Origin: Haliotis rufescens | Taxonomy: Eukaryota | Length of the DNA stretch: 64,000 nt | Reading direction: 5' to 3' | Assembly: GCF_023055435.1 (NCBI RefSeq) | Contig: NW_025964301.1 | Span: 1,054,001-1,118,000 of the forward strand | Shown: positions 28,626-63,549 of the stretch, one piece after another | Numbering within the stretch: position 1 is the first letter of the stretch | How the letters are laid out: every line of letters begins with the position of its first letter | The notes under the pieces: model-generated | Seen by the model: only the letters and a program-made list of their open reading frames with translations | Database searches by the model: none | What the model was told of the DNA's origin: nothing | Program-made: the position numbers and the translations under genes

Positions 28626-29122
28626 CTATTGGCCCGAGTCGTGCTGAGTGACGCCAGAGAGGAATGGATTTTGATTGGAGGCCGACGACCAACGACCCGA
28701 TTGGAAGACACTGTCAGTCTCATCGCTGGTAAATGACACCTCAGACCCGAAGGTCGACATTGGACTCATCGGTGAACGAGGAGACGCCAGAATACAGTCC
28801 AGGTCACTTCTTCGTATGGGACGCACTTGTTGCCTTGCTGCTGCAACAACTTCCGCGATGTCGTTCCGCTTGAGTTCAGAAAATGCATCAGTTAGGTCAT
28901 CCATGAGCTTGTCGGTGTCCCTTTCAGTATTCCTCCGTCTCCACTCAGTGAGAAGCTCGAGTCCTGGGTTGGATCGAATCTTGTCAGCCCTGTCAAATAT
29001 GGTGGTGATAGCGTCTGTGGGAAAGTTGAGTTCGAGGCCAACATTTCGCCATTCTGAATACGGTAAGGTATCTGCCAAGGCTGCCAGGCTTTTATCCGTC
29101 AGAAGGGGATGCTTGGCAATAA
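28626..29122 (-). CDS. Paralogue A last exon (death domain)
   Basis: Acceptor TTGCAG; death-domain W..LG.EL and LL.EW pattern. Confidence 0.85.
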
Positions 29123-32100
29123 CTGCAATGACAAGACGCCTTTGTTACATATAGGTAGTCCTGCACCATGACCGTGGAATATATTTTTTTTATGAAAAAA
29201 TAATAATCTAGAAATGCATACAAAAGCAAGTCTAGCCAGCTCAAGCTAGCTCTATTCCACATATCAGCATAGAGAAAAAATAATAATTTAGAGTCAAGAA
29301 GGATATTGTGTAATATAAGATTTCAGAGACTAAATGTTAGTCTAACATATAGGGGATACACATGGTTAATTTTTAAGGTGCCAATGCTTATCGTGAGACG
29401 CGGGATCGGGTGGTCAGGCTCACAGATTGGTTGATTGCATGTCATCGTATCCCAATTGCATGGACATGACGTCAATCTCTGGGTTGTCTTGTCCAGACTC
29501 TATTATTTACAGACCGCCTTCAAATAACTGGAAAATTGTTAAGTGCGGCGTTAAACAACAAATACATAAACAAAACAAAAAACATTTAAATCATAGTTCG
29601 AGAAATGTTATGTTGTAAGAATGAGCACTTGCATAAATCCGTATTTTGATGTTGCTAATATTGAATCTATATTTCTTTAAGTGGCGTATGGCAGTTGGTA
29701 TGATAAAGAAGGTTGATAGTTATATGAATGTACAACTTCTTTATTACAACAAATGCGACGTTTCGGTGTAGATACTCGGTAATAACACGTCACTTGTTTA
29801 ATAACGTTGTTGGTATCCACATCGAAACGTCGCTTTCATTGTAATAAAGAAGTTGTATAATCATAGAACTATCTCCATTGTTAAATCTATGTTGTTATAT
29901 TTAGAATCCATGTTCATGAATAAATTCTAATATTCAAAAACAACTTGATACCAAAATACGTGTCTAATTATGTCAGTGTAAACGTGATGACAAGTCAAGA
30001 AAAGGCGACACCCCGTCACAATGTGAAACCGATATAGACAAAGTGTAATTTATTGTTATTGGCCTACCACTTATCCCTATCAAAGAAAAAGTAACTGTGT
30101 TTTATGATAATTGATTACACAAAGTGTAGATTGTATCCGGCCACTGAAATTCACCTTCTAAAGACAAAAAATAAAAAAGAACTGAACTGAATTTGTTCAA
30201 TAATACGTCCGACCCAAACAAATTTAAATCAAATTTATTTATTTTTTGAGTGAGTGAGTATGGTTTTACGCCGCTTTTAGCAATATTCCAGCAATATCAC
30301 GGCGGGGGACACCAGAAATGGGCTTCACACATTGTACCCATGTCGGGAATCGAACCCGGGTCTTCGGCGTGACGAGCGAACGCTTTAACCACTAAGCTAC
30401 CCGACCGCCCCGAAAATATTTTTGAGTTACAAAACATTTACCTAAGCTAATTGATTAGCAAAAATCATTGAATAAAAATGCATAGCCAAAGTGTGATAAG
30501 GTCAAGGAATATAATGCAATACCTGATGGTTTCCGTGGAATTGAAGCCTCGATCGAAGGTTCCTGGGTTTGGGAATATTTTCTCTCTCTGGAAGAAACTT
30601 CTGTACCCCGGTGGCCTATGGCACTCATAGAACGTTGGTTCTTCTTGGCGGGCCTTTGCCTCGTGGATGGCTTCTTGTTGGCGGCCTTCTTCCACTCCAG
30701 GGGAAAGTGAACCTTGTGATCATGCTGGCCCCAGTAGAACCGCAAGCTGCCATCCTCCCCCGTGGATGTGAAGGGGATGACCACTTTATTGGTTCTGGAC
30801 ATTTGGTTGAAATAAAAAGAATTTGTTGCAAATGCCTTGTCATGAAGCTTAATGCATCCACCCAGAGCTAGTTTGATTTTAGTTCTGTCCCTGAGTTCGA
30901 TGTCCCTTGATCTGCTGTGCTTGATCTCTGTCATGCCATCGTTGGTGTGTAGTTCGACAGCTCTGTCCACCTTGGTGAACTCCACGCAGTCAACTAGGAT
31001 GTAGTTGACCCTCAGATGTTGGTCATAGTCAAGGAAGGTGAGGAGAACACACAGATTCAGCTTCCCGATGGCGTGTTTGGCCGCTCTGACTATCTCTCTG
31101 ATAGGACTGTGAGGTTGGACGGCGACACAGCAATACCTGAAACATCAGAGACACGACGTTATATACAATCAAGGATCATGGGTTCCTGGCATGGTCAAGG
31201 GACGCAACTCTGCAAAATGAAATGTGGCGCTAGAGACATCTTGGCCACACCTGTCGTATGGGTCCATGCACCAGTGATTATGAGTTAATTGACCTTGACG
31301 CCTCTTTTAAAAATATTTCAGGGCGTTTATGGTGGTTGTGATGGGTATCGCTATGGTCATAGTCGATGCGATCCAGGATCCAGGCACGGCTGAGGGAGGC
31401 AACTCTGTTAAGGTAATCCTACTATTACAGGTTGAGGAATGAAAGAGGGACAGTGATTGGGAACATAACAATAACCAACAATGTCTAACTAGACAACCCT
31501 CGTACATGCTACTACGTTGGAATTATAAGCGAGCTACCATTCGATATTCCAGGGGGTAGGGGAAAGGCTTGGGGGCAAGGATTTTGTTTGAAGATTAGAT
31601 ACTTTTTCAGCTACAGGTGCAAAACCAGATACTTTGATAATTAAGACTATGCGACTGATTATAAAACACCTTGCAACAATGTATTTTTTGTGTCATTTCG
31701 TTTTTTCGACAGTCTGAAGCATAATTTTTTAAGAATTAGCGAGACAATTTATTTTTTCAATAAAATCCCCCTCCCATAACCCAACCCCAACCCCCAACCC
31801 ACCCACCACCCCTCACCCCCAACCCCAAACCCCGCCCCCACCGCCAATATCAAATAATGGTCTATCCCATAGTAAACATATACAGATACTATTTTATGTT
31901 GTTTGTAAAGTCAAACAAAACTTTTCAAAATACAAAATAAAATCGTAAAAACAGACATAAATCATATTCATAAGCAAGCTGTTTTAACAAATTTAAAGAG
32001 GCTAGACCTACCAAAGAAAAACTATTGTGTGTTTATAAAAATAGAAATGTGTATGTTTTTGTCTGTTTTGCACACACAATATCGAATACGATAAACATGA

Positions 32101-35100: not shown

Positions 35101-38100
35101 ACTAAGAGTGTAAAAATGAGGGTTTAGCGTGTTGAAAAGCTTGGATGGTATGTATGACTGTAAAAAGATGAAGAGAGAGGGCAACCTAAGTTGGAAGAAC
35201 TTGTCCCCTATTCCCGTTCACTTCTCGTGAATAGGTATGGCTAAACCAAAGAAACAACAAGGTGAAGAATCGCGAAGGTAGCATCAACATAATGGATGCA
35301 TACATATTCGCATCAAAGAGTACCCGCTGAAACTTTTCACTGGGATCGTGTAGGAATTTCCTCCCTGTTTCATAGGGGATACGTTAACGACGGTAACGTC
35401 GTCTTCGTCTTCGTCATCATCGGCGTCGTCATTCTTTTTCCAGTGTAGAAACATGACCCTGCCATGCCCCTTCACAAAGTCGCCATCGAGAGGAAGGCGT
35501 ATGTTAGCCTCTGTGTGGAGCTTCATCGGTGGATGCACTGTGAGAATGTTGGTGAACCCAACTATACAGCGGAACTTTTCATTATCACGTTTGTATTCCT
35601 CAAACCGCTGCTGGTCGACGATGTCCGTCTGAAGAAAGATATTCATACGTTAATGTTGGTTTGTTGGTTGGTTGGTTGGTTTGTTGTTTAACGCCGCACT
35701 CAGCAATATTCCAGGTATATGTCGGCGGTCTGTAAATAATCAAGTCTGGACCAGACAATCCAGTGATTAATGTCATGAACATCGATCCACGCAATTGAGT
35801 TACGATGACATGCATCAACCAAGTCAGCGAGCCTGACCACCCGATCCCGTTAGTCGCCTTTTACGACAAGCATAGTCACCTTTTACGGCAAGCATGGGTT
35901 TGCTGAAGAACTATTCTACCCCGCAATCTTCACGGGTCTATACATTAATGACAAAATGGTGACCTTTGATTTTATTTCTTGACGCATAGAAAGTTTTGTT
36001 ATTCGGGCTACAACTATGTGTTATAAAAGTACGAACACCTGGTGTCATCACTGCGTTTCGGTGATCCATTCATATCATTTTCACCGCTATTTTGCCTATG
36101 TTCCCAATGGAACCTGTTTCTGCGGAACGAGGCTGATTATTCTGCCTGCCAACCATGTGTTACGGTGAGTGAAAACTCAATTCTATGCTGATATCCAGAA
36201 GCTTATTTACGTTGTGAACAATAATATTTGTACTTTTTGACCAGAAAAGAGAGAGTGAATTTATACGCCGCTTTTAGCAATATACCAATCATATTATTTC
36301 CTGCGTGTTGAACCAACATTTTAACACGTAGGCAACGTCACCAGGCCTGATATAGCCTGAGGATATATACAACTCGAAGAAGTAGAACACTCGATTGGAA
36401 TTGGGGGTTCCTTAACTTCTTTTTAGTAGTATATTCCGAAATATATTCTGTTCAATGACGTGGTTCAAAAATTCAAATATACTTGCAACAATTTTCAACT
36501 TCGTTTCCTTCTTCAAAGAATCTTCTGGGAAGTCAATGGCAATTCTCTCGTCCTTCTCAGAGACAAACTTGTGACCTTTCGGCCCCACTGTGGCATATTC
36601 CGGTTTTAACTCCGCCGTCACACAAAACACGTCCATCTCTGTCAGCTTGCCATATACACAGCCGCCTTCCTGCAGGAAGGAATCAAGGACTGTACACTAC
36701 CATGCATGTATATTTACTGGATATTATGTTTTACCATGGGTTCAGACTGTCAGAGTTATCTTGTCACTGATACAGGCTTATGAGGCAGGGTCCCTTTCCA
36801 CAGAGTGATCGTAACTCCTATACTTTAACATAGACTTACGACAGTTGTAGCTCTCATATTTTAACATAGACTTACGATAGTCGTAACTCCCATACTTTAA
36901 CATAGACTTACGGCAGTCGTAACTCCCATACTTTAACAATGACTTACGATAGTCGTAACTCCCATTCTTTAACATAGGCTTAAGACAGTCGTAACTCCCA
37001 TACTTTTAAATATACTTACGACAGTCATAACTCCGATACTTAAACGTAGACTTACTGACAGGTGTCAGTCCTATACTTAACGACCATCCTTTGGAAACTC
37101 GACTTCATAAAAAAAGAAAGAAAAGTATTCCCAAACGGAGACAAAAAACGGTTGCGGTAGAGTGGGGCCGCCATCTTGTTTTCCAAAACCTGTACATCTT
37201 TTCGTTCCTTATCTGCAACCCTTCATCAAAACTGATATCCCATGCATAACATGACGTTACTTAACATAACTTAACGTGATTAAGGAAGAGTTATGACATG
37301 AACTGCATGTCACCATGAGTGTGTTTTGAACTAGCTGTTCTATGGTTATAACCCAAGCCCGAAGAGCAGCTTTATACATCGGAATACAGTTTTATTGTTT
37401 AACGTCACACGTAGCAATATTCCAGCTGTATGACGGCAGTCTGTAAATAATCGAGTCTGGACCAGACAATCCAGTGATTGACATCATGAGCATCGATCTA
37501 AGCAACTGGGATACGATGACATGCATCAACCAAGTCAGCAAGTCTGACCACCCGATCCCGTTCGTCGTTTCTTACGACAAGCATGGTTCGTTGAAGACCA
37601 ATTCTAACCAGGGTATTCATGAGGCACATCGGAATACAATACATGTTTCAGGGTTAAGGAATTGCAAACCGGGGCATACAAACCTTGTATTCTGCCGGTT
37701 CCAGGTGCCATTGTCCGCCAATCTTCATACAGTACGTAAACGTGTACAACACTTGGGGTGGAATGGATCGTTCTGGCATCTCCAGGGGAACAATCAGCTC
37801 CCCATCTGGAGGCAGAGTCTGGAGACTCTGGACAACCCTGTACACATCGGACACCAACAGCTGATCCTGGTGGAGTCCAAGCTGATCCAAGCACTCGTCG
37901 CGTTCCGCGGAGTGGAGAACCTTCACGTCAACGTTAGGGTCCTTTCTTTGTGTTGGAAGACCGAGGATAGTTTTCAAACGTTCTTTGAACTGAGAGAACA
38001 AACCTTGCTTTTCCTGGGTCTGACCAATCAGGTCTAATTTCGTCACATCTCTGAGTATGAAATAACAGGCATTAAGCAACTGGTATAATACAGTGTCATG

Positions 38101-40857
38101 TTTGTGATGATGATGAAAGCAAGAAGTTGAAAATTAAGTTGAAGGAAAATGTGGAGTGTGATAAGCTAAGATCGTGACGCAAACAGAATATCTGGGGTAG
38201 ATTCAAATGCATGTTGCATGTTTCTGGAGTACTGCTTTGTGTTGTCAGGCGAAATAGACATATGGTTTTTTTTCAAAATTTGTGAGAGACGGGTGCTACC
38301 GGTAGAGCAGGGTATGACCCTTGTCGCGAATACCAGTGCCACTGATTTTCAGTGGCCCATTCAAATAATTTTCACCGCTATTTTGCCTGTTACGCCCATA
38401 TAGAATACTAAACGAGCTCCCGTGTAATACCAATTTTACGAAACGAGTGAATAGTTGTGGTATGTGACGAGCGAAAGCGAGTCAGATACCACAACTATTC
38501 ACGAGTTTCATAAAATTGGTTTTACACGGGAGCGAGTTTAGTATTTTATTTATTACTAGCCATTTATAACGTTTTCAGATTTATACTGTTGAGTGTGAAT
38601 AGGCTGACACCTACACGATCCACGGCATAATCCAATTGAGTTTAACACAATAATACTTCAAGCACGTCAAAAGTTGAAACGTATGAATTCAATACCATAC
38701 AACGGCCCACTTTTAGAATTCAGGAGTCCGTTCCACAAAATTAAATTAGCGTTAAGGTTATCGCAGCTCACATACTTTAACTTAGACTAACGACTGTCGT
38801 GCTACAGTACGATGGCCTTGTGGAACGGGGCCTTGCAGCTCAAAGTTTACAATGACGTCACAATACCGATGACGTAATTTGTGGAATTTTGTTGCAAGAT
38901 CCTTCGGCGAAACAATGCCATATGACGTCAGCCTAGCAACAAGGTTGCTGGGGTCATCGAGTGTGCATAAGCTCCTCTCAGTGATCTATCATCTCCACAC
39001 GCAATGTCGTTGGATAAGCCAAGGGATGTTGAGAGCTTTCAATATTTGTTCTAGAAACGTGTTCGGAGAGTACATCAGCACGCGTTTTGGTATTACACAA
39101 TGTGTAATACAGCTGTATGTTTATTAAACGCGTGATCTCTTCACGGGCAAGTAATAAAATGGGATCTGTTTCGTCAGATAATCGAGACTAGTTGTTGCTG
39201 GCGTTGACGTTTTATATTTCACCTGATACAAGACAGAACCTTGACCTTCACGTGTTACTGTAAGTTAATAACTGTGCATGAAGAAAATTGTGATTTCATA
39301 TTTTACTTTGGCTAAATCATCACGAACATTCCGTACTCAGGAGTACTGAAACATGTAAAAGTTGTATTGAAATCATACTGTTATGTTGAGGAATAATGTT
39401 GAAATACGACTCCAACTCATAATTTACGTATTCTTATTAGAGTCCAAGAAAATGCCAGAAAACGAGGCAAAAGTGTCGGTCATGCAACAGGGAAGATCGT
39501 ATTGCAAGGTATAAACCACAATGCTACATGAAGTTTTATGATGAATATGTATATTAATTTATCAATATAGGGTTACTCTAGGTACACACAGAACAGAGAA
39601 ACAAATCTTTCTGGTCTCCGTTTCACTTTCAAGCCCCGCTTCTGTTCCTTAGTCAAGATCTTAAACTAAGGGCAGGTCACTCTAACGTCCAGAGCTACGC
39701 TCAGATGGTGTCCCAGGTCCTTTTTCTTATTCTATACGTGCAAACGTTTGTTTACAGCATCGCCTGCAGAACACCGTGCATGTTATTGTAACCCTGTCCT
39801 ACGGTTATGATTGTCATTGAGAAGTGAAATATGATCTATATTGTGGTAAGTTCTATTATTAAGCAACATTTAGACGGATCAGCCAAATGGCAAACAAAAG
39901 ATCATAGAAATTAGTCTTCGTGGTTGTAGTTATAGTATTAACATGTAATTAAAAGGAAGCCATTGAGCAATGTCAAAACGCTGGAAGATTTAAATCAACT
40001 TTAGTGGATTTCTCTTACTGCACACGACACTCGTGTTCTCACTACAAGTTAGGACTTTTGTGTAGAAAATAGGGGTGACTAACGGTCTGGAAATCACTAT
40101 TGCGATAACTATTGATATTGAAAGAAACTATCGCGATAACTATTGATATTGCAAGCAACTATTGCGATAAATATCTATAGTTTTCGTGTATCATTTTAGA
40201 TGGAGTTTTAAGTTGAATTATACCTTGGAACTGAAGCTTCCTTTGAATGTGATAACCATAACAACAAATAAAAATTAAAGTTTGAGATATGACTGATTTG
40301 TTTTTTCTTTACCCTAATTATTTAAGAAAAAGAAACTTCCACATTACCATGTGTAAATTACTACCACGCATGATCAAAAGAAAAACAAATTTGAACAGCA
40401 TTGCATGTATTTTATTGATATGGTAAATACAATCGAAACTATCGATATTCCTAACTGAAATCGATACTATTGATAGGAACCTGATTTAACAATCGATTTA
40501 TTGACTTTAAGTGCTTAACAAAAACAGCAATATATCGATATTTCGATTGATCGTGACACCCCTAGTAGAAATATTCAACAACCTATAAATAGCACAGTAA
40601 TAAGAGCCTCGTTTTGGCCATAAGCAGCGTTTGGCATGATCATTCGATGACTACCTTTAAATGATAAACACCAACCAACAAAATCGGGGAAAATACAACA
40701 CTAAAGAAGCTAGGATACCACGGTGAGTACTAAACTTGTGTCCCAGATCAACCACCAGATATTTCTACGACAAGAACGAAGTGTGTGGATATAAGGTATC
40801 AAATGGTTTAAGGTATCAAATGAGTCAGAAAGAGGATACTTACTCGTCACTCGCCAT
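28626..40857 (-). CDS. ZU5-ZU5-UPA-Death domain protein, paralogue A (DTHD1/PIDD-C-like). Exons 40857-40844, 38050-37684, 36669-36487, 35628-35324, 31136-30523, 29122-28626 (1980 nt, 659 aa)
   Basis: All junctions are phase-consistent (one GC donor). ZU5-like VGPKGHKFVSEKDERIAIDFPEDSL resembles ankyrin ZU5-B IGPEGG...AVFPEGAL. C-terminal death-fold exon LTDKSLAALADTLPYSEWRNVGLELNF...LELLTEWRRR...LKRNDIAE. Confidence 0.8.
30248..30411 (-). mobile_element. SINE A
   Basis: Family consensus; TATTTTTTGAGT duplicated at the flanks. Confidence 0.85.
30523..31136 (-). CDS. Paralogue A UPA-like exon
   Basis: Homologous to 47309-47940 and 60242-60807 (SRSRDIEL, RTNKV). Confidence 0.85.
33572..35147. 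repeat. 79-bp satellite (~20 copies) with alternating variants, in paralogue A intron 4
   Basis: GAGTGTAAAAATGAGGGTTTAGCGTGTTGAAAAGCTTG recurs at 79-bp spacing (33605, 33684...). Confidence 0.95.
35324..35628 (-). CDS. Paralogue A ZU5-B exon
   Basis: GFTNILTVHP...IRLPLD...VMFLHW...VKSFS. Confidence 0.85.
35655..35938 (-). mobile_element. SINE-like family C (other minus copies ~37393-37620, 49528-49770, 54115-54390, 56880-57225)
   Basis: Family consensus. Confidence 0.8.
36487..36669 (-). CDS. Paralogue A ZU5-A/ZU5-B junction exon
   Basis: CTGCAG acceptor; GCAAGT donor. Confidence 0.8.
36808..37080. repeat. 36-bp minisatellite
   Basis: TCGTAACTCCCATACTTTAACATAGACTTACG recurs. Confidence 0.85.
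37684..38050 (-). CDS. Paralogue A ZU5-A exon
   Basis: LLVSDVYRV...LIVPLEMP; AAG|GTTTGT donor. Confidence 0.85.
38405..39158. mobile_element. Element with a long 5' hairpin (38405-38546), inserted into an older repeat
   Basis: ~140-bp imperfect palindrome; TTATTACTAGCC / GGCAAGTAATAA inverted pair. Confidence 0.55.
40070..40564. mobile_element. hAT-like MITE
   Basis: TAGGGGTG...CACCCCTA ends, ATCGATA-rich subterminal repeats, 8-bp TSD GTAGAAAA/GTAGAAAT. Confidence 0.7.
40844..40857 (-). CDS. Paralogue A first coding micro-exon (MASDE)
   Basis: ACCATGG Kozak context, GA|GTAAGT donor, phase 2 matches the next exon. Confidence 0.6.
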
Positions 40858-41271
40858 GGTTGATGTTTTCAGGTCTTGCGCCAGTATTTCGGCCCTAATA
40901 GATAGCAACCACCATGAGTCAAAAACTGTTCACAGCATAATAAGATGAAAATGCTTAGTTATTTCAGTTTTTAATTGGCCACTGCCACACTCCGCCTGCC
41001 TTACATATACACGCCAACAGGTCAATTTGAGCATTATTAAACGACCGTGATATGTCCTTGATTCCCACTAATGTTTATCGTATAATGGATAGTGTTATTG
41101 ATGTGATCAACCAACTTGGTGTCACGAACCGAAAAATATGCAAAGGAGGTCACCTAACAGGAACTTCTTTTAATCTCCATACATTGATTCGATGTCTACC
41201 TCCTCGACCACGTTCCCAGTAAGTTTAGATAGGTGAGTGAGTCGATATTTAACGTCACATCGGCAATATTT

Positions 41272-41405
41272 NNNNNNNNNNNNNNNNNNNNNNNNNNNNN
41301 NNNNNNNNNNNNNNNNNNNNNNNNNNNNNNNNNNNNNNNNNNNNNNNNNNNNNNNNNNNNNNNNNNNNNNNNNNNNNNNNNNNNNNNNNNNNNNNNNNNN
41401 NNNNN
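41272..41405. other. Assembly gap (134 N)
   Basis: N run. Confidence 1.
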
Positions 41406-48600: not shown

Positions 48601-50226
48601 TAGCGCAAACGGGCATACCTAAAACAATTGTTAACTCGTTGCGTAATGCTTCACATATATTTCCCCAGATATTATATATATTTCAGATGCAATTTAAAGC
48701 ACATCGGGACAGTATACAGTATGATTGAACACATTTAACTGTATCTTGGGTATATTTTAGATTCAAAATTTATGTAAAATCAAAAATTATTCCTGAGGGA
48801 TTCTTTGACGAAGAACTTGAAATCATACGCGCATTCTGATTGGTTTGTCGTATTTTCGCACATAACATTCATCGATAGGGGGACGAGTCTACTTGCAGGT
48901 TACGGAAAGGGGCGAGTGGTGACGAATGCATTGAATGCAGACACACGTATACTGACATACCAACATGGACATACATACGTACGAGCTGAAGGAAGTGACG
49001 TCTACACTGTATGAGTTCTTGGGTTCTTCCTTCGGGAGGTTACAGATCACCTCTGCCCCTCGATCTTCCTCAGATTCCTTCCAGTGAACAAACAACACTT
49101 CAGAGTTGTCTCCCTTTGCATGCAAGTCTAACGGGAGACACACTTTTGCGGGACGTTTCAGTTCCATTTCAGGTGTTACAGCAAGGATGTTTGTGAATCC
49201 CTGGATGCAGGTGAAACTGTCATTTAGTTTGAGATACCCTTCATACCGCTCCTTGTCTACCACCATGGACTGAAACCAGAATTATGCGTTTACTTTACTT
49301 TTGTTTGCTTGTTAACGCCGCACTCGCACACATTGAGAGGTTACGCTGGTAAGTTTTAGCCTCTTTAAGGATACATTCTTTTAACCAACAGTTGATCCTT
49401 GAAACCCAACGATCCCATTCTGGCTCCTTTCTGTCCCATGTAAATATTATCATTGGAAGCGCAGTTCAATGACACAAGATCTGTAAAACGCCCTGTAAAT
49501 ATGTTGTATTGTGTATTCAAACAAGTAATGTTTGTTTGTTTGTTTGTTTGTTGTTTAACGCCGCACTAAGCAATATTACAAGTATATGACGGCGGTCTGT
49601 AAATAATCGAGTCTAGACCAGGCAATCCAGTGACTGACATGAGCGTCGATCTAGGCAATTGGAATACGATGGCATGCATCAACCAAGTCAGCAAGTCTGA
49701 CCACCCGATCTCGTTAGTCGCCTCTTTCGACAAGCATTGGTTGCTGAAAATCAGTTGTAAACCGTATCCTAGCGGCCATAAACCTATATCAGTTGTATAT
49801 ACTAGTACCTATATAAGCTTGAGAATCCGGGTCTGTTTGTCCCCACAAGAGTCTGATTAAGATAAGCTAGTTACAATTGGGATATTGATGACATTTGTCT
49901 GAAAAAACCCACACTAATAGCAAAAATATTATTTTACCTCTATTACAAATGTACTGAATTTCATTTTAGCATTGTAAGACATGTGAAATTATAATGTATA
50001 AAAGTGAAACATCTGTATGTGGTCATCCTGTTTCACAAGTCCGGACCGCCTCTGTGATCGATCCCCGACCGTGTCATACCAATAGACGTTAAAATATGTT
50101 ACTTGTTGTTACCCTGTCTGGCTCTCGGCATTAAGTGGCTAAAACAGAGATTGGTCGGAGTCGGCTCGGAGTCAGTATACTGTGTCTGAGTGGGATATTC
50201 ATGTTAAACTGGTATCTCAGTGTGCT

Positions 50227-53200: not shown

Positions 53201-56200
53201 CCGATGGCACCCGCCACTCACAATTTACATAAACAATACGTGTTTATTTCTTGTTTAACGCCCCAACCATCAATACTCCTGTCATACGTAGGCAATCAAT
53301 CGAGTCTGGATCACTGGCTCGAGTTCAGACATACAGTAAAGTACGGTTAAAACGAACTCAAAGGGACTACTAATTTTAGTTCGTTATAACAGTAGTTCGT
53401 TATAAGCATATATACAGCATAATACAGCAAATAGTCTGGACCAAAAAAGTAAGTTCGTTATATCCGTCAGTTCGTTATAAGCGTGTTCGTTATAACCGTA
53501 GTTTACTGTAATTTCGGTGTGTTTACCGGAGCGTCAGTTGGTGTCTTGTGCCAACAGCCATCATATTTAAGCCACAACCAGAAGGAACAGCCTGTCCTGC
53601 ATCTCTCGGGTACGTCAACGGGGACGACAATATCAGCGTGGGGGTCGTCAACATCCTCGCTCCACCGCATCTTGTAGATCTTGGACACCAGCAACTGGTG
53701 CTCCCCGAGATTCATCTCCTGTACACGCATGCGCAAACTACGATCATTTATGTTGCGGATGGACAATTAATACGAAGTTTGTCTTAATCAGATGTTAATA
53801 AATATATTTAAGTGTATTGGTTGGCCCAAACTGTTTGAACACACTGTACAGACTTATGCCGCAGCTGATTAATGTTCAAACATTAGCAGCCCCAATTAGT
53901 GAGTTATTCGCCACAATCATAATACTTATGTCAGCACTATACCCATGCTCACTAGCTCGACAAAAAATGAATAAAAATAAAAATAATAAAAAATGAAAGA
54001 TGGTCAGGTATTTAGGTACAAATAAAATGCCGCGCAAAGAAAAAGTATACACCCATGTTCGATGGTGGCTAAAATGAAACAAACAACAAAAGGCTATTCG
54101 ATGGTGATGTTGGGTTGATTTGTTGTTTAACGCCGCACTCAGCAATATTCCAGCTATATGACGACGGTCTGTGAATAATCGAGTCTGGACAAGACAATCA
54201 AGTGATTAATTTCATGAGCATCGATCCACACAATTGGAATCGATGACATGCATCAACCAAGTCAGCGAGCCTGACCCCCCGATCCCGTTAGTCGCCTTTT
54301 ACGACAAGCAGAGTCACCTTTTACGGCAAGCAGAGTCACCTTTTACGACAAGCAGAGTCACCTTTTACGGCAAGCAGAGTCACCTTTTATGGATGGTGAT
54401 GTATTTGATACGGGTATGATACTTGTGTTTTAAGACCTGTTTTCAGACTTGTAACGTTTGTAATTTTGGGGTCACATCCAATTTTTAATCGCAGACTTTC
54501 TTTGCCCGGCAGTTAAGTTCGTTGTTGCACCATTTTGTTTTCTACAAACTAGTTTTTTGTTTGATAACACAACATTGCATAACCCTGTATAGCTGAATGT
54601 TGATATGATGTGCAAATCTAAAAGCTCATTTAGGTAAAATGCAAGTTGTCAGTCATTCGAATAACTTTCCTTACAAATTTTCAAAGGTTTCTTTAACTTT
54701 CAAATGGGCCAATATCAGTTGGCCCTAAAAACCTGTAAAATACTTCCTCCTATATTATACTACTCAAAAAATATTAAGGACCACCCGATTCCTTCATATT
54801 ACTGTAGTTAATCTGTTATGCCATGAGAAGATTGGTGGTTCTTGAACCTTTTTGAGTAGTATATAACTTAAGTAAAATGAGTGTTTGAGTATGTAAATAT
54901 TTGCCTGTCTGATGTCATCGTCAGTTTCTGATGGTGTGTCATCTCCTTCTGCAGCAAGATCAAAGGTCACATCGCTGGAACGACATAACAAATCATTTAT
55001 ACCAAAGGCGCGAAAAACCCATACCTGTTCAAATGAGAATTATGCAAATGAGTGAACAAATCATCTTAACACATAAATCGGATGCTATAATGGTTTAATA
55101 ACTAAATTCTCACGAGTCCGATTTACTAAGATTTACGCCCGTGGAGATGCGGGTTAGCATTGGTTTCAGCATCCGATGCTTGTCGTAATAGGCAACTAAC
55201 AGGATCCGGTAGTACGTCTCGCTGACTTGGTTTGATGCATGTGATCGTATCCCAATTGCGGGGATCGATGCCCATCGTATTAATCACTGGATTGTCTGGT
55301 CCAGACTCGATTATTTACAGACCGCCGCCATTGAGTTGGAATATTGCTGGGTGCGACGTTAAACAACAAACAAACTATGGTTTAGTTTTCAGATTCATAC
55401 TCCGATGTTAAATATATTTCACTATGCGCATTCTATAGATTCACATACAAAGTATATGTACATCATTCGTGGCGTATTAAATTACCTTACTCATGTTACC
55501 CATCCTAGCGAATCACGTGGGGTAGGAGACACATGCAAAACACCGAGGTGGGTGTACGTTATATTTGTGACATATGTATGAGTGAGTGAGTATGGGTTTA
55601 CGCCGCTTTTAGCAATATTCCAGCAATATCACGGCGGGGGACACCAGCAATGGACATGTGTATGAATTAAGACTAATATATCTTTATATATGTATGAATT
55701 AGGACTAACATGTCTTTATATATAAAACATAAACTGTATTTCAATGTTTAATATATAACGTCAACGGCAGAGAATAATCAGTGTCGACGATCTGCCGAAA
55801 CAGATCATATACGGCGTAAAATTCAAAACAGCTGTGAAACATTTTCCTTGATGCAATAGTATTTGAGTGAATGGATATATATGGGTGAATATTGGTCACG
55901 TACACATCAGCAATATTACAGCTAGTTGCGGCAAGGATCAACATTTTTACCTTACTAATCAAAATACAAATGAAAACGTGGTTATGACCAAGATCACTAA
56001 AATATCAGTTTCACTGTATGGAATTTCAACATCGTGGCTGCCATTATCTTCAGTATGACACTAGTGCGGTGTCCTTCATGTATCCTTTGAGGCAGTGGGG
56101 TAGCCTAGTGGATAACGCGTTCGTTGTCATACCGAAGGCTCGGGTTCTATTCCCCATTGGGTACGATGTGTAAAGCCCATTTCTGGTGTCCATTCCCTGA

Positions 56201-59430: not shown

Positions 59431-59870
59431 CTAAGCAGAAGACAAAGAACTGCTGTCGCCCGATGTCTCATTGCTTGAAAAAAAAGGTCCAAAACTAAAG
59501 CTTGGTTCTGGACCAAATGGGGGAATTGAGGACGGAGATCCACAATCTAGGTCACTTCTTCGTATTGGACGCGAATGTTGTCGTGCTGAATTGAGAACGC
59601 CAACAATGTCGTTTCGCTTGAGTTCAGCAAATGCAGCTATGAGGTCGTTTATCAGTTCATCTGGATTCCGGAGTTTATTTCTCCTTCTCCATTCAGTAAG
59701 AAGCTCCAAGCCAGGGTTGGATTTCATTCTCTCTGCTTTATCAAATATGGAGGTAATAGCATCAATCGAAAAGTTGAGTTCAAGACCCACACTTCTCCAT
59801 TCTGAATGTGGTAATATGTCCCCAAACGCTGCAAGACTTTTGTCGGTTAGAATTGGATGCATCTCCGCGC
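59431..59870 (-). CDS. Paralogue C last exon (death domain)
   Basis: TTTGTAG acceptor; HPILTDKSLAAFGDILPHSEWRSVGLELNF. Confidence 0.85.
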
Positions 59871-62800
59871 CTACAAACATGGACATTGATTTAATGTGCA
59901 TAAAGTGTGCATTGCAAGATCAATGTAGTAATTCAGTGGTGAAACGACTTTATACTGCCAGGAAAACGAATACGATTGAAAATTGGATGTGCCCTAAAAA
60001 TTACAAACGTCACCAACGTTACTAGGCTGAAAACAGTCCCCGAAACATCAAACTGAGGTCCAAAACACAAATATGATACTCTTTTAAATACATCATCATC
60101 GAATAACTATTTTTATTTTATTTTAGCCACAATAAAACATGAGTGTTTACTTTCCCTTGCCTGGGGCTCTTTAACTTAGTTATTGAATATGTCAAAAGAA
60201 ATTTACTTTGAGCAGACATTAAGGAGAACATATGATACTACCTGGAGAATGTCCTGGGGTACCATGGAAGGTTAGAGATGTTGCTCCAGAAGGCTCGCAG
60301 GAATAGGACCTACTCATTTGTCGGGGTTTCACAGAGGATGATTTCCTAGCAACGCTTCTTTTTGATTCCAATGGAAAGTATACTTTGTGATCGTCATGAC
60401 CCCAGAAGTATCGAACGTTTCCATTTTTTCCTTTGGAAGTAAAGTGAATAATAACTTTGTTGGTTCTTGCCATTCGGTTGAAATAAAAAGCATTCGTTGT
60501 AAATGATTTGTCATGACGCTTAATGCCTCCACCCAGATGAACTTTAATCTTGGTTTTATCTTTGAGTTCGATGTCCCTTGATCTGCTGTGCTTGACTTCC
60601 GTCATGCCATCGGTTCTGTGAAGTTCGACAGCTCGGCCCACCTTGGTGAATTCAACGCAGTCAACTAGAAGGTAGTTGACACCCCGGTGTTGATCATAGT
60701 CAATGAAGGTGAGGAGGACACACAGATTCAGCTTCCCGATGGCGTGTTTGGCCGCTATGGATATCTCTTCAATCGGAATGTTTCTCTGTACAGCGACACA
60801 GGCATACCTAAGGCAAATGAAATACAAATCTTCATGATAATTTAGTCGTAAATACGTAAAGACAACTTTAACATATGATAAATTTTCGATTAGTGTGAAA
60901 CATCTCAACATGAGTACGACATCCCTATTTGATAAAGTAAAGCTTAGGGTTGACAAAAACAACAATATCTTTCAATAAATATGAACCCGTGACGATCCGG
61001 GTTAGAATTTGATTTCAGCATCCCGTGTTTGTCGTAAGAGGCAACTAACGGGATCGGATGGTGAGCTTGGTTGATGCATGTCATTTGCGGAGATCGATGC
61101 TCAAAAACTAAATTGTCTGGGCCAGAACGCCGTCATATGGCTTGAGTATTGTTGAGTGCGGCGTTTAACTACGAACAAAGAAACGGGATTTCAGAGTACC
61201 TGCTGAATGAGGTGACCGGGGCTATGTAGGTATTGGCACCTCCTGTAACAGCATTTACAACTGTCACATCCTCCCCAACATCTTCACCCTCATCCTCATC
61301 ATTGTTCCAGTGTAGAAACATAACATCGCAATCCCCCTTCTCAAACTCAGCATCCACAGGAAGGCGTATCTTAGCATCTGCGCGGAGCTCCACTGATGGG
61401 CTGACTGTGAGAATGTTAGTGAACCCAACAATGCAGCGGAACTCTTCATTCTTCTTCTTATATTCTTCAAACCGTTGTTGGTCGATGATGTCCGTCTGAA
61501 CAAAAGTGTTAGTTACATCATTAACACTATCAAATTCTTTGAGAGGCTTGATAGCGGTGTAAGAACCTGGACAGAAACGTCGATCCTATTTGCAATAAAG
61601 AAGTTGTTCATCACTGTATCTTATCCTTACTTATTAATACCATTAAGTACAATGCACCATACACTCTGTGGAACCTTTATATACCCGCTTAACCAAATAT
61701 CACTATGTAAATTTTCATTTTGAGAATTTACGTTTTTTTGTGATCCCTGCTATTGATATTATCTGATTTATCAATATAAAGTACAACTTTTCAATGAAGT
61801 ATCTTTCATTAAGTATTGCGTCAATATTGTGGACTCAATTTTCGTGGTTAAATTTGCTTATCGTCTTAACAGTCAGGTTTGTTAATGTAACGTTATGATG
61901 GAATGTTTGATCCAAAATACACTTGCCACAATTATCAGCATGGTTTCTTCTTCAACAGCATGTTCAGGAAAGTCAATGGCAATTCTCTCGTCCTTCTCAG
62001 AGACAAACTTGTGACCTTTCGGCCCCACTGTGGCATATTCCGGTTTTAACTCCGCCGTCACACAAAACACGTCCATCTCTGTCAGTTTGCCATATACACA
62101 GCCGCCTTCCTGCAAGTGCGAATACCATAATATATAATGTGTAGAAACACTTCTTTCCCTGATCACTGATATATCAAAGATTATACTGTCATCATGTTCA
62201 ACCGATAAGAACTAGATAAGCATGTCTAAAAGTTGGGGCGTCTTCACTTCTTCATTTGCGACAGTTCAGCAAATGTATCCGTAGTAATTCACATGAAAAC
62301 ATATAATACCACATTTATACATGGGGTCATGGGTGGCCCAGTCGTCTAAGGCGCCGCAATTCGCTGTGCAGAGTTGCGTCCCTTTGGCATGCCAGAAACC
62401 TATGATTGTGGGTTCGAATCCCGGTTCGCCCTGATTATGTTCCTAGGTTTGTCAGCACCATACCCATGCTCGTGGGTTTCACCGAAGTGGTAAACGTCTG
62501 AGACCTGCATCACTTCGGACTTTCCTCCAACATTAAGCTGACACGCCGTGACATAACTGAAATACTGTTAAAAGCGGCGTTAAAATATATCTCACTCACA
62601 TTCATATATTACCCATGAGGGTGAACAAAAGTATCACTGAGGAAATACTGTTGTTTCAAGCTTATTGTTTATTGTTTTAATTAATAGCTACGTGTTGCCA
62701 CATCAATATTAAGTCTCTTTTAATGTCCATTTGGAGATGACGTCATTCATTGTTTATAACGTCAGTTTTTATGTGTCATTCCAACAATAGGTTGGCATGG

Positions 62801-63549
62801 CCTTTGTCTCTTTATGTGATCTTAAACTGACATTTGTCTACATTATAGTACGGTAAAAAAAGACAATTGGTAACAGGGTACAGCATCGGGTATTATCGCA
62901 TTTTGGAATGATAGGTTATCTGTTCGCCATGAATAAAAGTCCCACGTTGAAAAGCATACAGCTATTCCGAAATTTATTGTAACATTTAAATTATAGTGAG
63001 CTCGCAATGCTTGTATTTGTCAAAGCGAATCCAATATTTTTCTTGAAAGATTTATTGAGACAAGCGTCTGTGTTTTGAGCAACCTGTTCAATGGTTTTAG
63101 CCAAGCTTTGAAGAAGGACTTCACACATCGGAATACAATACATGTTTCAGGGCTATAGAATTGCAAACCGGGGCATACAAACCTTGTATTCTGCCGGTTC
63201 CAGGTGCCATTGTCCGCCAACCTTCATACAGTACGTAAACGTGTATAACACCTGGGGTGGAATGGATCGTTCTGGCATCTCCAGGGGAACAATCAGCTCC
63301 CCATCTGGAGGCAGAGTCTGGAGACTCTGGACAACCCTGTACACATCGGACACCAACAGCTGATCCTGGTGGAGTCCCAGCTGATCCAAGCACTCGTCGC
63401 GTTCCGCGGAGTGGAGAACCTTCACGTCAACGTTAGGGTCCTTTCTTTGTGTTGGGAGACCGAGGATAGTTTTCAAGCGTTCTTTGAACTGAGAGAACAA
63501 ACCTTGCTTTTCCTCGGTCTTATCAATCAGGTCTAATTTCGTCACATCT
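59431..63549 (-). CDS. ZU5-ZU5-UPA-Death domain protein, paralogue C, 5'-incomplete. Exons 63549-63183, 62109-61927, 61495-61200, 60807-60242, 59870-59431
   Basis: Exon-by-exon homology to A, with identical 367-nt and 183-nt exons in length and consistent phases; first exon lies beyond the window. Confidence 0.82.
60242..60807 (-). CDS. Paralogue C UPA-like exon
   Basis: CCTTAG acceptor, G|GTAGTA donor. Confidence 0.85.
61200..61495 (-). CDS. Paralogue C ZU5-B exon
   Basis: TDIIDQQRFEEY...VTSFS. Confidence 0.85.
61927..62109 (-). CDS. Paralogue C ZU5 junction exon
   Basis: TTGCAG acceptor; GCAAGT donor. Confidence 0.8.
62323..62600 (+). mobile_element. SINE B
   Basis: Family consensus. 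Confidence 0.85.
63183..63549 (-). CDS. Paralogue C ZU5-A exon
   Basis: Near-identical to 37684-38050. Confidence 0.85.

What the first reader, a model, noticed from the sequence alone, without database searches (positions are those of the whole stretch)
28626..63549. Tandem cluster of stand-alone ZU5-ZU5-UPA-Death domain genes
Seen: three same-strand paralogues with the same exon series and intron phases; A and B give open CDSs of 659 and 603 aa. Known: the ZU5-ZU5-UPA-DD module occurs in ankyrins, PIDD1 and DTHD1, and in PIDD1 and ankyrin it follows LRR or ankyrin repeats. Here A and B start only a short distance before ZU5-A, with no sensor repeats or transmembrane segment, so they resemble a genetically encoded PIDD-C fragment. 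Inference: a lineage-expanded family of cytosolic death-domain adaptors (PIDDosome or innate-immune signalling) diversifying by tandem duplication.
Basis: partly seen in the sequence, partly recalled or inferred. Interest (0 to 1): 0.8.

Follow-up and report, generated by a model that had tools for sequence, protein, structure and literature searches.

The report
Abalone ankyrin-like death-domain gene cluster
Three neighbouring red-abalone genes encode proteins built like the tail half of ankyrin (two ZU5 domains, a UPA domain, a death domain) with no sensor part; they are real, already annotated but unstudied, and may be self-cleaving cell-death or immune adaptors.

Summary
Three minus-strand paralogues lie at 28626-40857 (A), 45245-53737 (B) and 59431-63549 (C, first exon outside the window). 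Exon series and intron phases (2,0,0,2,1) match. RNA-like contigs from 4 runs in 3 studies confirm A's exon 2-3-4 splicing.

The N gap (41272-41405) lies in the B-A intergenic DNA, 414 nt upstream of A's ATG, and touches no coding exon.

The fold is ZU5-ZU5-UPA-Death. A family profile hits ankyrin-1 (E 4e-24), and the top Foldseek hit is the ankyrin-B ZU5-ZU5-UPA-DD crystal (E 1e-21). The N-terminal domain alone matches ZU5 domains at Z 7-8. There are no ANK repeats, LRRs or membrane segment.

The family is mollusc-restricted as far as named. The window's cluster (at least four genes) is an abalone-only clade.

An SFS motif (CARD8/NLRP1 type; HFS in paralogues) sits at the ZU5/UPA junction, so autoproteolysis is plausible. 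Function is untested.

The parts
40844..40857 (-). Gene A (LOC124137817) coding exon 1: ATG GCG AGT GAC GA | gtaagt; intron phase 2
   Evidence: Exact match to P0034 residues 1-5. Unique in the window. The E1-E2 joint itself was not seen in reads, because the contigs stop 30 nt beyond exon 2.
37684..38050 (-). Gene A exon 2: disordered N-terminus plus most of ZU5-N
   Evidence: P0034 residues 6-127 match exactly. Spliced contigs in 4 of 4 runs. The N-terminal domain model has pLDDT 89.6 and ZU5 top hits.
36487..36669 (-). Gene A exon 3: end of ZU5-N and start of ZU5-C, with a GC-AG intron behind it (gcaagt donor)
   Evidence: P0034 residues 128-188. Contigs join 37683|36668 in 4 of 4 runs and 36487|35628 in 3 of 4.
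35324..35628 (-). Gene A exon 4: rest of ZU5-C, ending in the S287-F288-S289 motif (35326-35334); intron phase 2
30523..31136 (-). Gene A exon 5: UPA domain plus disordered Ser/Lys/Arg-rich linker; intron phase 1
   Evidence: Profile match to ankyrin UPA. Fold match to the CARD8 UPA, Z 10.7.
28626..29122 (-). Gene A exon 6: Death domain (about 28788-29108), disordered tail and stop codon (28626-28628)
   Evidence: Pfam Death 27.2 bits against a cut-off of 22.6. Fold Z 11.2-11.4 to the FADD and ankyrin-G death domains.
41272..41405 (.). Assembly gap (134 N) in the B-A intergenic region, 414 nt upstream of A's ATG
   Evidence: Both flanks end in the same repeat segment. No coding exon is touched.
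53527..53737 (-). Gene B block homologous to exon 2 (shortened ZU5-N). It has an open frame, a weak acceptor, an in-frame ATG at 53730 and a CCG|gtaaac donor. It is not in the RefSeq CDS.
51130..51330 (-). Gene B block homologous to exon 3. It is not in the RefSeq CDS. Both its splice junctions are copied in tandem repeats.
   Evidence: Pfam ZU5 E 0.012, below the cut-off.
48983..49269 (-). Gene B (LOC124137865) exon 4. The RefSeq start codon is at 49266, and the SFS motif is at 48985-48993.
   Evidence: P0002 matches exactly.
47309..47940 (-). Gene B exon 5: UPA plus linker
   Evidence: P0002 matches exactly. Pfam UPA_2 E 0.017, below the cut-off.
45245..45639 (-). Gene B exon 6: Death domain and stop codon
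   Evidence: P0002 matches exactly. Pfam Death 30.8 bits.
63183..63549 (-). Gene C (LOC124137864) exon 2. Exon 1 lies outside the window, at window-equivalent position about 68458-68471.
   Evidence: P0029 residues 6-127 match exactly. Exon 1 is in L015.
61927..62109 (-). Gene C exon 3, with a GC donor (gcaagt)
61200..61495 (-). Gene C exon 4, with the SFS motif at 61202-61210
60242..60807 (-). Gene C exon 5: UPA plus linker
59431..59870 (-). Gene C exon 6: Death domain and stop codon
   Evidence: Pfam Death 29.8 bits.
51308..52216 (-). 85-bp tandem repeat, 10.7 copies, in B's intron upstream of exon 3. Each unit is acceptor + 19 nt + gtaagg donor.
50856..51189 (-). 87-bp tandem repeat, 3.9 copies, duplicating the 3' end and donor of B's exon 3

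Best explanation
The window holds three of at least four adjacent, same-strand paralogues of a mollusc family of soluble proteins. Each consists only of an ankyrin-type ZU5-ZU5-UPA-Death-domain module behind a short disordered N-terminus. A and C are intact, spliced and under purifying selection. B is divergent and probably compromised or shortened at its 5' end.

Shown: gene structures, domain folds, homology to the ankyrin ZZUD module, absence of ANK repeats, LRRs and membrane segments, the tandem expansion inside abalones, and gene conversion between A and C.

Inferred (my odds about 0.35-0.4): they work as cytosolic death-domain scaffolds. The ZU5-ZU5-UPA block holds the death domain in a closed state, as in ankyrin, UNC5b and PIDD1. 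The conserved S-F-S at the ZU5-C/UPA junction is an autoproteolytic site of the CARD8/NLRP1 (SF|S) or PIDD1 (HF|S) kind. Release of a UPA-DD fragment would then let the death domain oligomerise and recruit other death-domain proteins for caspase or NF-kB-type signalling.
For: Identity:
- P0034, P0002 and P0029 map exactly onto the window. The sources name them H. rufescens LOC124137817, LOC124137865 and LOC124137864.

Splicing:
- Contigs of X1, X2, X5 and X9 (3 studies) join A's exons 2-3 in 4 of 4 runs and exons 3-4 in 3 of 4.
- Unique intron bins have depth at or near 0, and exon bins 7-22.

Fold:
- The 16-sequence family profile hits ankyrin-1 at E 4.2e-24 over profile positions 160-602, and the ankyrin-B ZZUD chain 4d8o_A at 1.2e-19.
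- The AF2 model of A (pLDDT 68.7, ordered parts 70-94) has Foldseek top hit 4d8o at E 1.1e-21 over 563 columns.
- VIA-align gives Z 17.9 (371 aligned, rmsd 10.8) and 17.7 (374, 9.7) to ankyrin-B ZZU, and 16.8 (251, 5.7) to ankyrin-R ZU5A-ZU5B. It gives 11.8 (124, 2.6) for ZU5-C, 10.7 (117, 3.2) to the CARD8 UPA and 11.2-11.4 (88-92, 2.4) to death domains.
- The N-terminal domain alone has pLDDT 89.6. Only 7 of 48,161 chains reach Z >= 5. Six of them are ZU5 domains of ankyrin, CARD8 or NLRP1, the best at Z 7.7 with rmsd 2.9 over 98 of 107 residues.

Motif:
- x-F-[S/C/T] at the junction occurs in 13 of 16 aligned family members (SFS, HFS, GFS, NFC, KFT, AFS).
- The motif is SFS in A, B and C. 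A C124 paralogue has HFS.
- CARD8 and NLRP1 cleave at SF|S at the C-terminal end of the ZU5-like domain (PMC3210808, passages read).
- PIDD1 needs cleavage at S588 to make the active PIDD1-CC fragment (PMC7883297, passages read).

Selection and family:
- dN/dS for A vs C is 0.15-0.24.
- Only 27 proteins of 1.84 billion match the UPA-exon profile at E <= 0.001.
- 13 of the 18 I looked up carry a name, and all 13 are molluscs.
- A-D form a Haliotis-only clade with support 100/99.
Against: - No functional or expression-condition data were seen. The runs are coded and their kind (RNA) is a guess.
- A's E1-E2 joint and transcription start were not seen in reads. They rest on the RefSeq model and on splice consensus.
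- Ankyrins carry x-F-T at the aligned position (alignment), and I recall no report that they self-cleave. The motif may therefore be structural only.
- Pfam's ZU5, UPA and FIIND models do not reach their cut-offs on any exon or full-length member.
- The sequence profile of the N-terminal exon finds no ZU5 in the PDB. Its fold Z of 7-8 is in the range the tool calls middling. Foldseek on that domain gives no hit at E <= 0.001 (best 0.019, though 8 of the top 10 are ankyrin ZU5 entries).
- Whole-module superposition on 4d8o is poor (rmsd 9.7-16.6, TM 0.29-0.35), so the closed packing is not shown.
- No kB consensus lies upstream of A, C or D.
- B lacks a verified 5' half.
Confidence: 0.6

Rival explanations
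1. ANK-less 'small ankyrins'. The proteins keep the cytoskeletal job of the ankyrin spectrin-binding and regulatory half, binding spectrin or other ankyrin partners through ZU5-N and UPA. They have nothing to do with cell death or immunity.
For: Ankyrins are the closest relatives by sequence (E 4e-24) and by fold. The best match of the N-terminal domain is the spectrin-binding ZU5A of ankyrin-R. NCBI names the H. cracherodii orthologues 'ankyrin-1-like'.
Against: ZU5-N has no detectable sequence similarity to ankyrin ZU5-N, so conservation of the spectrin surface is not shown. Lineage-specific tandem expansion is unusual for a core cytoskeletal adaptor; that is my inference. The S-F-S/H-F-S motif is the kind found in self-cleaving signalling proteins.
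Confidence: 0.15
2. PIDD-like platform. The family replaces PIDD1 in molluscs. Its UPA-DD fragment assembles with CRADD/RAIDD to activate caspase-2.
For: A lophotrochozoan survey found CRADD in 13 molluscs but found no PIDD (PMC11463336, passages read). The domain order equals PIDD1 minus its LRRs (PMC7883297 figure legend). HFS or SFS sits at the position of PIDD1 S588.
Against: By sequence the death domain is nearer to ankyrin (E 1e-6), RIPK1 and FADD than to PIDD (E 1.4e-4). No interaction test was possible. Pfam ZU5 finds four other loci in this genome that I did not characterise, so a true PIDD may exist.
Confidence: 0.1
3. CARD8-like tripwire. The protein is constitutively self-cleaved. 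Pathogen proteases or N-terminal degradation remove ZU5-ZU5 and free the UPA-DD fragment.
For: SFS motif as in CARD8 and NLRP1 (PMC3210808). A short disordered N-terminus (pLDDT < 50 for residues 1-43). ZU5 and UPA fold matches to CARD8 and NLRP1, Z 10.7-11.1. UPA promotes filament formation in CARD8 and NLRP1 (PMC11874512, passage read).
Against: The disordered N-terminus is only about 43 residues. dN/dS is low and there is no sign of an arms race. There is an extra ZU5 domain, and the output domain is a death domain, not a CARD.
Confidence: 0.1
4. The exons belong to one long gene, or carry upstream ANK/LRR exons missed by annotation.
For: The contigs stop 30 nt upstream of A's exon 2, so the preceding exon was not placed. 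An assembly gap lies 414 nt upstream of A's ATG.
Against: Each copy ends with its own stop codon after a Death domain. RefSeq models for A, C and D start with a short Met exon of the same phase. Relatives of A and C in H. asinina and H. cracherodii begin the same way. The X9 contig of 2,674 nt fits a single-gene mRNA.
Confidence: 0.03

Closest known systems
Ankyrin-R/B/G ZU5-ZU5-UPA-DD (ZZUD) module (PDB 4d8o, 3ud1, 6m3q, 7tw3)
   Same: Same four domains in the same order. It is the best sequence match (E 4.2e-24 for ZU5C-UPA-DD) and the best fold match (Foldseek E 1.1e-21; Z 17-18).
   Different: There are no ANK repeats and no long regulatory tail. The whole protein is 621-659 aa. ZU5-N is similar in fold only. 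The junction motif is S-F-S, where ankyrins have x-F-T. The genes are tandemly expanded in abalone.
PIDD1 (LRR-ZU5-ZU5-UPA-DD)
   Same: Same C-terminal architecture. An [H/S]-F-S motif sits at the ZU5-C/UPA junction, where PIDD1 cleaves at S588 to give the active PIDD1-CC fragment (PMC7883297 passages).
   Different: There are no LRRs. I saw no HFS at the end of ZU5-N. By sequence only the death domain is weakly similar (E 1.4e-4). The proteins are not the PIDD-C fragment but PIDD1 minus its LRRs.
CARD8 / NLRP1 FIIND (ZU5-UPA) proteins
   Same: ZU5 and UPA folds (Z 10.7-11.1). The motif at the ZU5/UPA boundary is the same S-F-S (PMC3210808 passages). As in CARD8, a short disordered N-terminus comes first and there is no sensor domain.
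   Different: There are two ZU5 domains instead of one. The output is a Death domain, not a CARD. No Pfam FIIND match appears.
UNC5 receptors and UNC5CL
   Same: ZU5-UPA-DD cytoplasmic module (UNC5b 3g5b: Foldseek E 2.5e-10, Z 10.3). UNC5CL self-cleaves by the same mechanism as PIDD1 (PMC7883297 passage).
   Different: UNC5 proteins have a single ZU5 and are transmembrane receptors. Here no hydrophobic segment is found (maximum Kyte-Doolittle score 1.07-1.47).
DTHD1 (death domain-containing protein 1)
   Same: The language-model feature search lists DTHD1 clusters among the nearest (0.92-0.93), including a mollusc 'DTHD1-like' cluster at 0.91. This is a lead only.
   Different: No alignment was possible, because no DTHD1 sequence was at hand. 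No paper in the library holds both DTHD1 and ZU5.

Membership tests
Ankyrin-type ZU5-ZU5-UPA-DD module | First ZU5 domain (ZU5-N) | tested here: met
   Met by fold only. The domain model has pLDDT 89.6. In the search without Foldseek, 7 of 48,161 chains reach Z >= 5, and 6 of them are ZU5 domains (ankyrin-R ZU5A Z 7.7, rmsd 2.9, 98 aligned). The two-domain match to 3ud1 has Z 16.8. The sequence profile finds nothing. Foldseek's best is E 0.019.
Ankyrin-type ZU5-ZU5-UPA-DD module | Second ZU5 (ZU5-C) followed directly by UPA | tested here: met
   The family profile aligns with ankyrin-1 residues 1062-1494 at E 4.2e-24. Fold Z is 11.8 (rmsd 2.6) for ZU5-C and 10.7-11.0 for UPA. The Pfam ZU5 and UPA_2 models stay below their cut-offs (E 0.012, 0.017, 0.0043).
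Ankyrin-type ZU5-ZU5-UPA-DD module | C-terminal Death domain | tested here: met
   Pfam Death is above its cut-off in 3 of 3 last exons. Among the 10 full-length members scanned, 5 match at E <= 0.01 and 2 pass the cut-off. Fold Z is 11.2 to the ankyrin-G death domain at 27% identity.
Ankyrin-type ZU5-ZU5-UPA-DD module | Closed supramodule packing as in 4d8o | tested here: inconclusive
   The whole-model superposition has rmsd 9.7-16.6 and TM 0.29-0.35. pTM is 0.54.
Ankyrin (ANK1/2/3) proper | N-terminal ANK-repeat membrane-binding domain | tested here: not met
   No Ank family appears in Pfam scans of the 10 members scanned, including C's close homologue P0001. I did not scan P0034 (A) and P0029 (C) whole; exon by exon they show only Death. 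A's CDS starts 5 codons before exon 2.
PIDD1 | N-terminal leucine-rich repeats | tested here: not met
   No LRR family appears in the Pfam scans.
PIDD1 | H-F-S autoproteolysis motifs at the ends of the ZU5 domains | tested here: inconclusive
   At the ZU5-C/UPA junction the motif is SFS in A, B and C. It is HFS in P0005, P0009 and the C124 paralogue. I saw no such motif at the end of ZU5-N. Cleavage itself cannot be tested here.
FIIND proteins (CARD8/NLRP1) | ZU5-UPA with an S-F|S cleavage motif at the boundary | tested here: met
   The motif and its position (end of ZU5-C, entering the long strand at model residues 280-296) are present. Fold Z is 10.7-11.1. Only the motif is shown, not cleavage.
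FIIND proteins (CARD8/NLRP1) | C-terminal CARD; Pfam FIIND signature | tested here: not met
   The C-terminal domain is a Death domain. No FIIND or CARD hit appears.
UNC5 / UNC5CL | Membrane anchor and single ZU5 | tested here: not met
   The highest 19-residue Kyte-Doolittle mean is 0.76-1.47 in the six members tested. There are two ZU5 domains.
DTHD1 | Orthology or shared architecture with vertebrate DTHD1 | not tested
   There is only an Atlas feature similarity of 0.92-0.93. No DTHD1 sequence was available, and no paper holds both DTHD1 and ZU5.

The most novel reading that the evidence does not exclude
Molluscs are reported to have CRADD but to lack PIDD (PMC11463336, passages). They may use this ANK-less, LRR-less ZU5-ZU5-UPA-DD family as their self-cleaving death-domain platform. 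Constitutive cleavage at [S/H]-F|S would yield a UPA-DD fragment. That fragment would nucleate a CRADD-caspase-2 (PIDDosome-like) or other death-domain signalosome, with release controlled by the ZU5-ZU5 part in a CARD8-like way. The abalone tandem cluster would then be a set of such platforms with different partners.
Probability: 0.12. Interest if true: 0.8.

Novelty: new variant of a known kind. Interest (0 to 1): 0.45.

Why it matters
The ZU5-UPA-death-fold module is the part that switches PIDD1, CARD8 and NLRP1 on by self-cleavage. In those proteins it comes behind LRR or NACHT parts or a long disordered N-terminal segment; in ankyrin, which is not known to self-cleave, the same module follows ANK repeats. 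Here it is the whole protein, it keeps the SFS/HFS cleavage motif, and it has multiplied in tandem in abalones.

If these proteins self-cleave and signal through their death domains, they offer a minimal natural model of this switch. They would also be a candidate for the PIDD-like activator reported as undetected in lophotrochozoans, which can be tested directly.

If they merely bind spectrin, they are ordinary small ankyrin relatives. Either way the genes are already in RefSeq as uncharacterised proteins, so the gain is in interpretation, not discovery.

Tried and rejected
- Pfam exon by exon: only Death is significant. Profile and fold searches overturned that.
- Profile of the exon-2 translations of A, B, C and D against PDB sequences: only two chance-level hits (E 0.46 and 0.83) and no ZU5.
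- The search for homologous proteins with alignment A2: returned only 3 close Haliotis proteins. It did not help for distant kin.
- Search for B's first coding exon. blastn found no similarity between the exon-1 regions of A and C, only weak matches that I took for repeats. Regex candidates at 56300-56248 and 55172-55114 have nothing to support them.
- kB-site scan (GGGRNNYYCC, both orientations) upstream of the ATG of A (414 nt), C and D (1 kb each): 0 hits. The whole window has 1 hit.
- Pfam ZU5 over the whole genome: 5 matches at 4 loci, none on this contig. I did not characterise them, so whether abalone has a canonical PIDD stays open.
- "Diversifying selection" is rejected on whole-exon dN/dS of 0.15-0.24. 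Site-wise tests were not possible with so few sequences. B against A or C is saturated at synonymous sites.
- Supplementary table S7 of PMC11463336 (its CRADD list) could not be seen. It may show whether an abalone was among the 13 molluscs.
- 9 of the 27 representative hits (P0016, P0018-P0022, P0024-P0026) were not looked up for names.
- Rows left out of the tree: all hits shorter than 400 aa, and P0033.

Full report
WHAT IS THERE. The window is G000:C523:1054001-1118000. The names that sources give to exactly matching proteins say the genome is Haliotis rufescens, the red abalone. tblastn of each open-frame block against the window shows three paralogous series of five blocks, all on the minus strand. 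I call them A (28.6-38.1 kb), B (45.2-53.8 kb) and C (59.4-63.6 kb). Window exons were handled one at a time, and full-length work used database proteins returned by the tools.

GENE MODELS. A profile of the three UPA exons (alignment A1), scored against 1.84 billion representatives, gave only 27 proteins at E <= 0.001. These, and a follow-up search, led to three RefSeq proteins that map letter for letter onto the window:
- P0034 (LOC124137817, 659 aa) is A.
- P0002 (LOC124137865, 436 aa) is B.
- P0029 (LOC124137864, 621 aa) is C.

A has six coding exons: 40857-40844, 38050-37684, 36669-36487, 35628-35324, 31136-30523 and 29122-28629. C has the same five downstream exons in the window (63549-63183, 62109-61927, 61495-61200, 60807-60242, 59870-59434). 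Its first exon (MSNE + 2 bases, gtaagt donor) lies 4.9 kb beyond the window end (L015 4471-4458).

Intron phases are 2,0,0,2,1 in A and C. D, a fourth same-strand copy, shows phase 2 for its first intron. Intron 3 of A and C has a GC donor (gcaagt).

B'S 5' HALF. RefSeq starts the CDS of B at the ATG in exon 4 (49266). The H. cracherodii orthologue (438 aa) starts at the same place. B does keep open frames homologous to exons 2 and 3 (53737-53527 and 51330-51130). Their amino-acid divergence from A (dN 0.80 and 0.48) is comparable to that of B's annotated exons (0.55-0.72).

Against this, the exon-2 block is shortened by about 50 residues and has a weak acceptor. I found no credible first exon. 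Both junctions of the exon-3 block are multiplied in tandem. An 85-bp unit (10.7 copies, 51308-52216) consists of acceptor + 19 nt + gtaagg donor. An 87-bp unit (3.9 copies, 50856-51189) repeats the exon's 3' end and donor. Starting at the in-frame ATG 53730, the exon sums give 573 codons.

THE GAP. The only N run is 41272-41405. It lies in the B-A intergenic DNA, with 414 nt between it and A's ATG and about 3.8 kb between it and B's stop codon. No reading frame depends on it. Both flanks stop in the same segment of a SINE-like repeat, which is the usual reason for such a break. Continuity, and the true distance from A's promoter to the gap, are unknown.

TRANSCRIPT EVIDENCE. The look-up of sequencing runs listed no run on record as RNA that holds the stretch, only runs whose kind is guessed. 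I laid contigs of X1 and X2 (study P1), X5 (P2) and X9 (P3) on 35280-41271. Single contigs run 38050-37683 | 36668-36487 | 35628-35321 without a gap in X1, X2 and X9. X5 shows the first joint only. One- to three-base shifts at the joints are alignment ambiguity.

Unique intron bins have depth at or near 0 in all four runs, and exon bins 7-22, so these runs behave as RNA. This confirms exons 2-3-4 and the GC-AG intron. The contigs stop 30 letters beyond the 5' end of exon 2, so the E1-E2 joint and the transcription start were not seen. Depth of 2-4 in the bin holding exon 1 is only a hint. No tissue or treatment data were available.

DOMAINS. Pfam on single exons finds only the Death domain above its cut-off, in 3 of 3 last exons. 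ZU5 (E 0.012) and UPA_2 (E 0.017) are sub-threshold. A 16-sequence family profile (A2) matches ankyrin-1 at E 4.2e-24 over ZU5C-UPA-DD, and the ankyrin-B ZZUD crystal chain at 1.2e-19. UNC5b, CARD8 and NLRP1 are not hit at E <= 1, and of PIDD only the death domain is hit (1.4e-4).

The AF2 model of A has mean pLDDT 68.7. It is ordered in residues 45-255, 265-437 and 500-606, and disordered in 1-43, 438-496 and 606-659. Foldseek's top hit is 4d8o, the ankyrin-B ZU5-ZU5-UPA-DD tandem (E 1.1e-21, 563 columns). It is followed by other ankyrin ZU5 structures, UNC5b (2.5e-10), NLRP1 FIIND (1.5e-5) and CARD8 (9.2e-5).

VIA-align gives these scores:
- Z 17.9 and 17.7 to ankyrin-B ZZU.
- Z 16.8 to ankyrin-R ZU5A-ZU5B (251 aligned, rmsd 5.7).
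- Z 11.8 for ZU5-C (rmsd 2.6).
- Z 10.7-11.0 to the UPA domains of CARD8 and NLRP1.
- Z 11.2-11.4 to the FADD and ankyrin-G death domains.

The first ZU5 rested on the whole-protein model, so I folded residues 43-149 of P0034 alone (pLDDT 89.6, pTM 0.83). In the search that does not lean on Foldseek, 7 of 48,161 chains reach Z >= 5. Six of them are ZU5 domains of ankyrin-R, ankyrin-B, CARD8 and NLRP1 (best Z 7.7, rmsd 2.9, 98 of 107 aligned). The seventh is a GAIN domain. Foldseek alone gives no hit at E <= 0.001, but 8 of its top 10 are ankyrin ZU5 entries.

So the ZU5-ZU5-UPA-DD reading is supported. It is strong for ZU5C-UPA-DD and moderate, fold only, for ZU5-N. The packing of the four domains is not established (rmsd 9.7-16.6). 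No ANK, LRR, FIIND or CARD family appears in the Pfam scans, and no segment reaches membrane-span hydrophobicity.

THE JUNCTION MOTIF. Exon 4 ends in S-F-S in A (S287-F288-S289), B and C. This is the point where ZU5-C passes into the long strand that opens UPA (model strand 280-296). In alignment A2, 13 of 16 members have x-F-[S/C/T] there. The motif is HFS in an H. asinina paralogue and in Lottia, GFS, NFC, KFT or AFS in others, and absent in three bivalve proteins. The red-abalone paralogue on contig C124 also has HFS.

CARD8 and NLRP1 cleave themselves at a completely conserved SF|S at the C-terminal end of the ZU5-like domain. There the first Ser stands in for the His of the HFS of PIDD and Nup98 (PMC3210808, passages read). 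PIDD1 must cleave at S588 to make the active PIDD1-CC fragment, and Unc5CL uses the same mechanism (PMC7883297, passages read). Ankyrins carry x-F-T at the aligned place (alignment), so the motif alone does not prove cleavage.

FAMILY AND EVOLUTION. The UPA-exon profile finds 14 places in this genome: the three in the window, three more on the same contig, two on C124, five on C57 and one on C401. D (P0003, LOC124137884, 666 aa) lies at C523:1128667-1135061 on the same strand. A death-domain-like fragment lies just beyond it.

Of the 27 representative hits I looked up 18. Thirteen carry names, and all 13 are molluscs: four Haliotis species, Lottia, Mizuhopecten, Mya, Sinanodonta, Potamilus and Crassostrea/Magallana. 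NCBI calls the H. cracherodii orthologues 'ankyrin-1-like'. In a maximum-likelihood tree of 18 proteins, A-D with their orthologues form a Haliotis-only clade (100/99). D branches first, then B (82/86), then A plus C (100/100). A groups with an H. asinina protein (100/99), so the A/C split is older than that species split (long branches among the bivalve rows).

Per-exon comparison of A and C gives dN/dS of 0.15-0.24 throughout. dS, however, is 0.06 and 0.26 in exons 2 and 3, against 0.96-1.93 in exons 4-6. Nucleotide identity is 97.2% over exon 2 plus 60 nt of intron. That pattern is purifying selection with recent gene conversion at the 5' end, not diversification.

WHAT IT MOST LIKELY DOES. 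Shown: soluble proteins made only of an ankyrin-type ZZUD module, conserved and expressed. Inferred: a death-domain scaffold that the ZU5-UPA block keeps closed and that probably self-cleaves at F288|S289. The freed UPA-DD part would oligomerise and recruit death-domain partners. UPA promotes filament formation in CARD8 and NLRP1 (PMC11874512, passage read).

I give the mechanism about 0.35-0.4. The rivals are:
- A cytoskeletal 'small ankyrin' role (0.15).
- A PIDD-like partner of CRADD (0.10).
- A CARD8-like tripwire (0.10).
- A single long gene, or hidden repeat exons (0.03).
These readings overlap and need not add to one.

NOVELTY. The genes are in RefSeq as uncharacterised proteins, so nothing new was discovered at the level of annotation. 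Four library searches found no description of an ANK-less ZZUD family in molluscs:
- ZU5 / UPA / death domain / mollusc.
- DTHD1 + ZU5, 0 papers.
- death domain / abalone / Haliotis / expansion.
- Unc5CL / autoproteolytic / death domain.
These were listings plus passages of five papers, not whole texts.

The Atlas feature search lists DTHD1 clusters, an arthropod 'ankyrin-3-like' cluster of 712 aa with Death + UPA_2 + ZU5, and fish FIIND-Death proteins as nearest. These are leads only. Similar stand-alone proteins may therefore exist outside molluscs.

Earlier notes of this scan on the same genome describe other death-domain families, and none uses the words ZU5 or UPA. I file this as a new variant of a known kind, of moderate interest.

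Noticed in passing
window 37625-38054 vs 63124-63553; 36475-36674 vs 61915-62114: Gene conversion between A and C. Exon 2 plus 60 nt of intron is 97.2% identical (dS 0.06) and exon 3 is 93.5% identical (dS 0.26). Exons 4-6 have dS 0.96-1.93, and the introns are otherwise unalignable.
   Followed up: yes
window 51308-52216 and 50856-51189: Both splice junctions of B's exon-3 block are multiplied in tandem. An 85-bp unit (10.7 copies) carries acceptor + 19 nt + gtaagg donor. An 87-bp unit (3.9 copies) carries the exon's 3' end and donor. This probably explains why RefSeq starts B's CDS in exon 4.
   Followed up: partly
window 36481-36486 and 61921-61926 (minus strand): Conserved GC-AG intron (donor gcaagt) after exon 3 in A and C. 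For A it is confirmed by spliced contigs in 3 of 4 runs.
   Followed up: yes
window 41200-41560: The assembly gap is flanked on both sides by the same segment of a SINE-like repeat (AATATTGC.GA.TG...CGT). Copies of this repeat recur through the window and take enormous depth in the RNA-like runs (bins 35680-35879 and 37280-37679).
   Followed up: partly
window 33569-35146: A 79/158-bp tandem repeat (20 or 9.9 copies, 90-97% matches) inside A's 4.2-kb intron 4.
   Followed up: no
L016 667-7321 (C523:1128667-1135321), minus strand: Fourth paralogue D (LOC124137884, 666 aa), with the same exon plan and first-intron phase. Its junction motif is N-F-C instead of S-F-S.
   Followed up: partly
L016 9739-9894 and L017 99-260, minus strand: Two pieces of a death-domain-like sequence (46-52% identity to the death domains of A and C) just upstream of D. 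No UPA exon was detected near them. It may be another gene or a remnant.
   Followed up: no
L006 (G000:C124:13761612-13765058): A paralogue on another contig keeps a PIDD/Nup98-type H-F-S ('VKHFSGY') at the same exon end. A second UPA match lies 21 kb away on C124.
   Followed up: partly
L007, L010, L011 (G000:C57, 15.86-16.16 Mb): Five more UPA-like matches on C57. In L007 the UPA-like part is followed in one 500-codon open frame by a long low-complexity tail. This may be a different sub-family.
   Followed up: no
window 23801-25333 (+) and 11869-13270: An intronless 510-codon ORF that I take for a sulfatase from its sequence (from recall, not scanned).
   Followed up: no
window 63584-63996: A degenerate 19/35-bp tandem repeat fills the start of C's first intron, up to the window end.
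   Followed up: no
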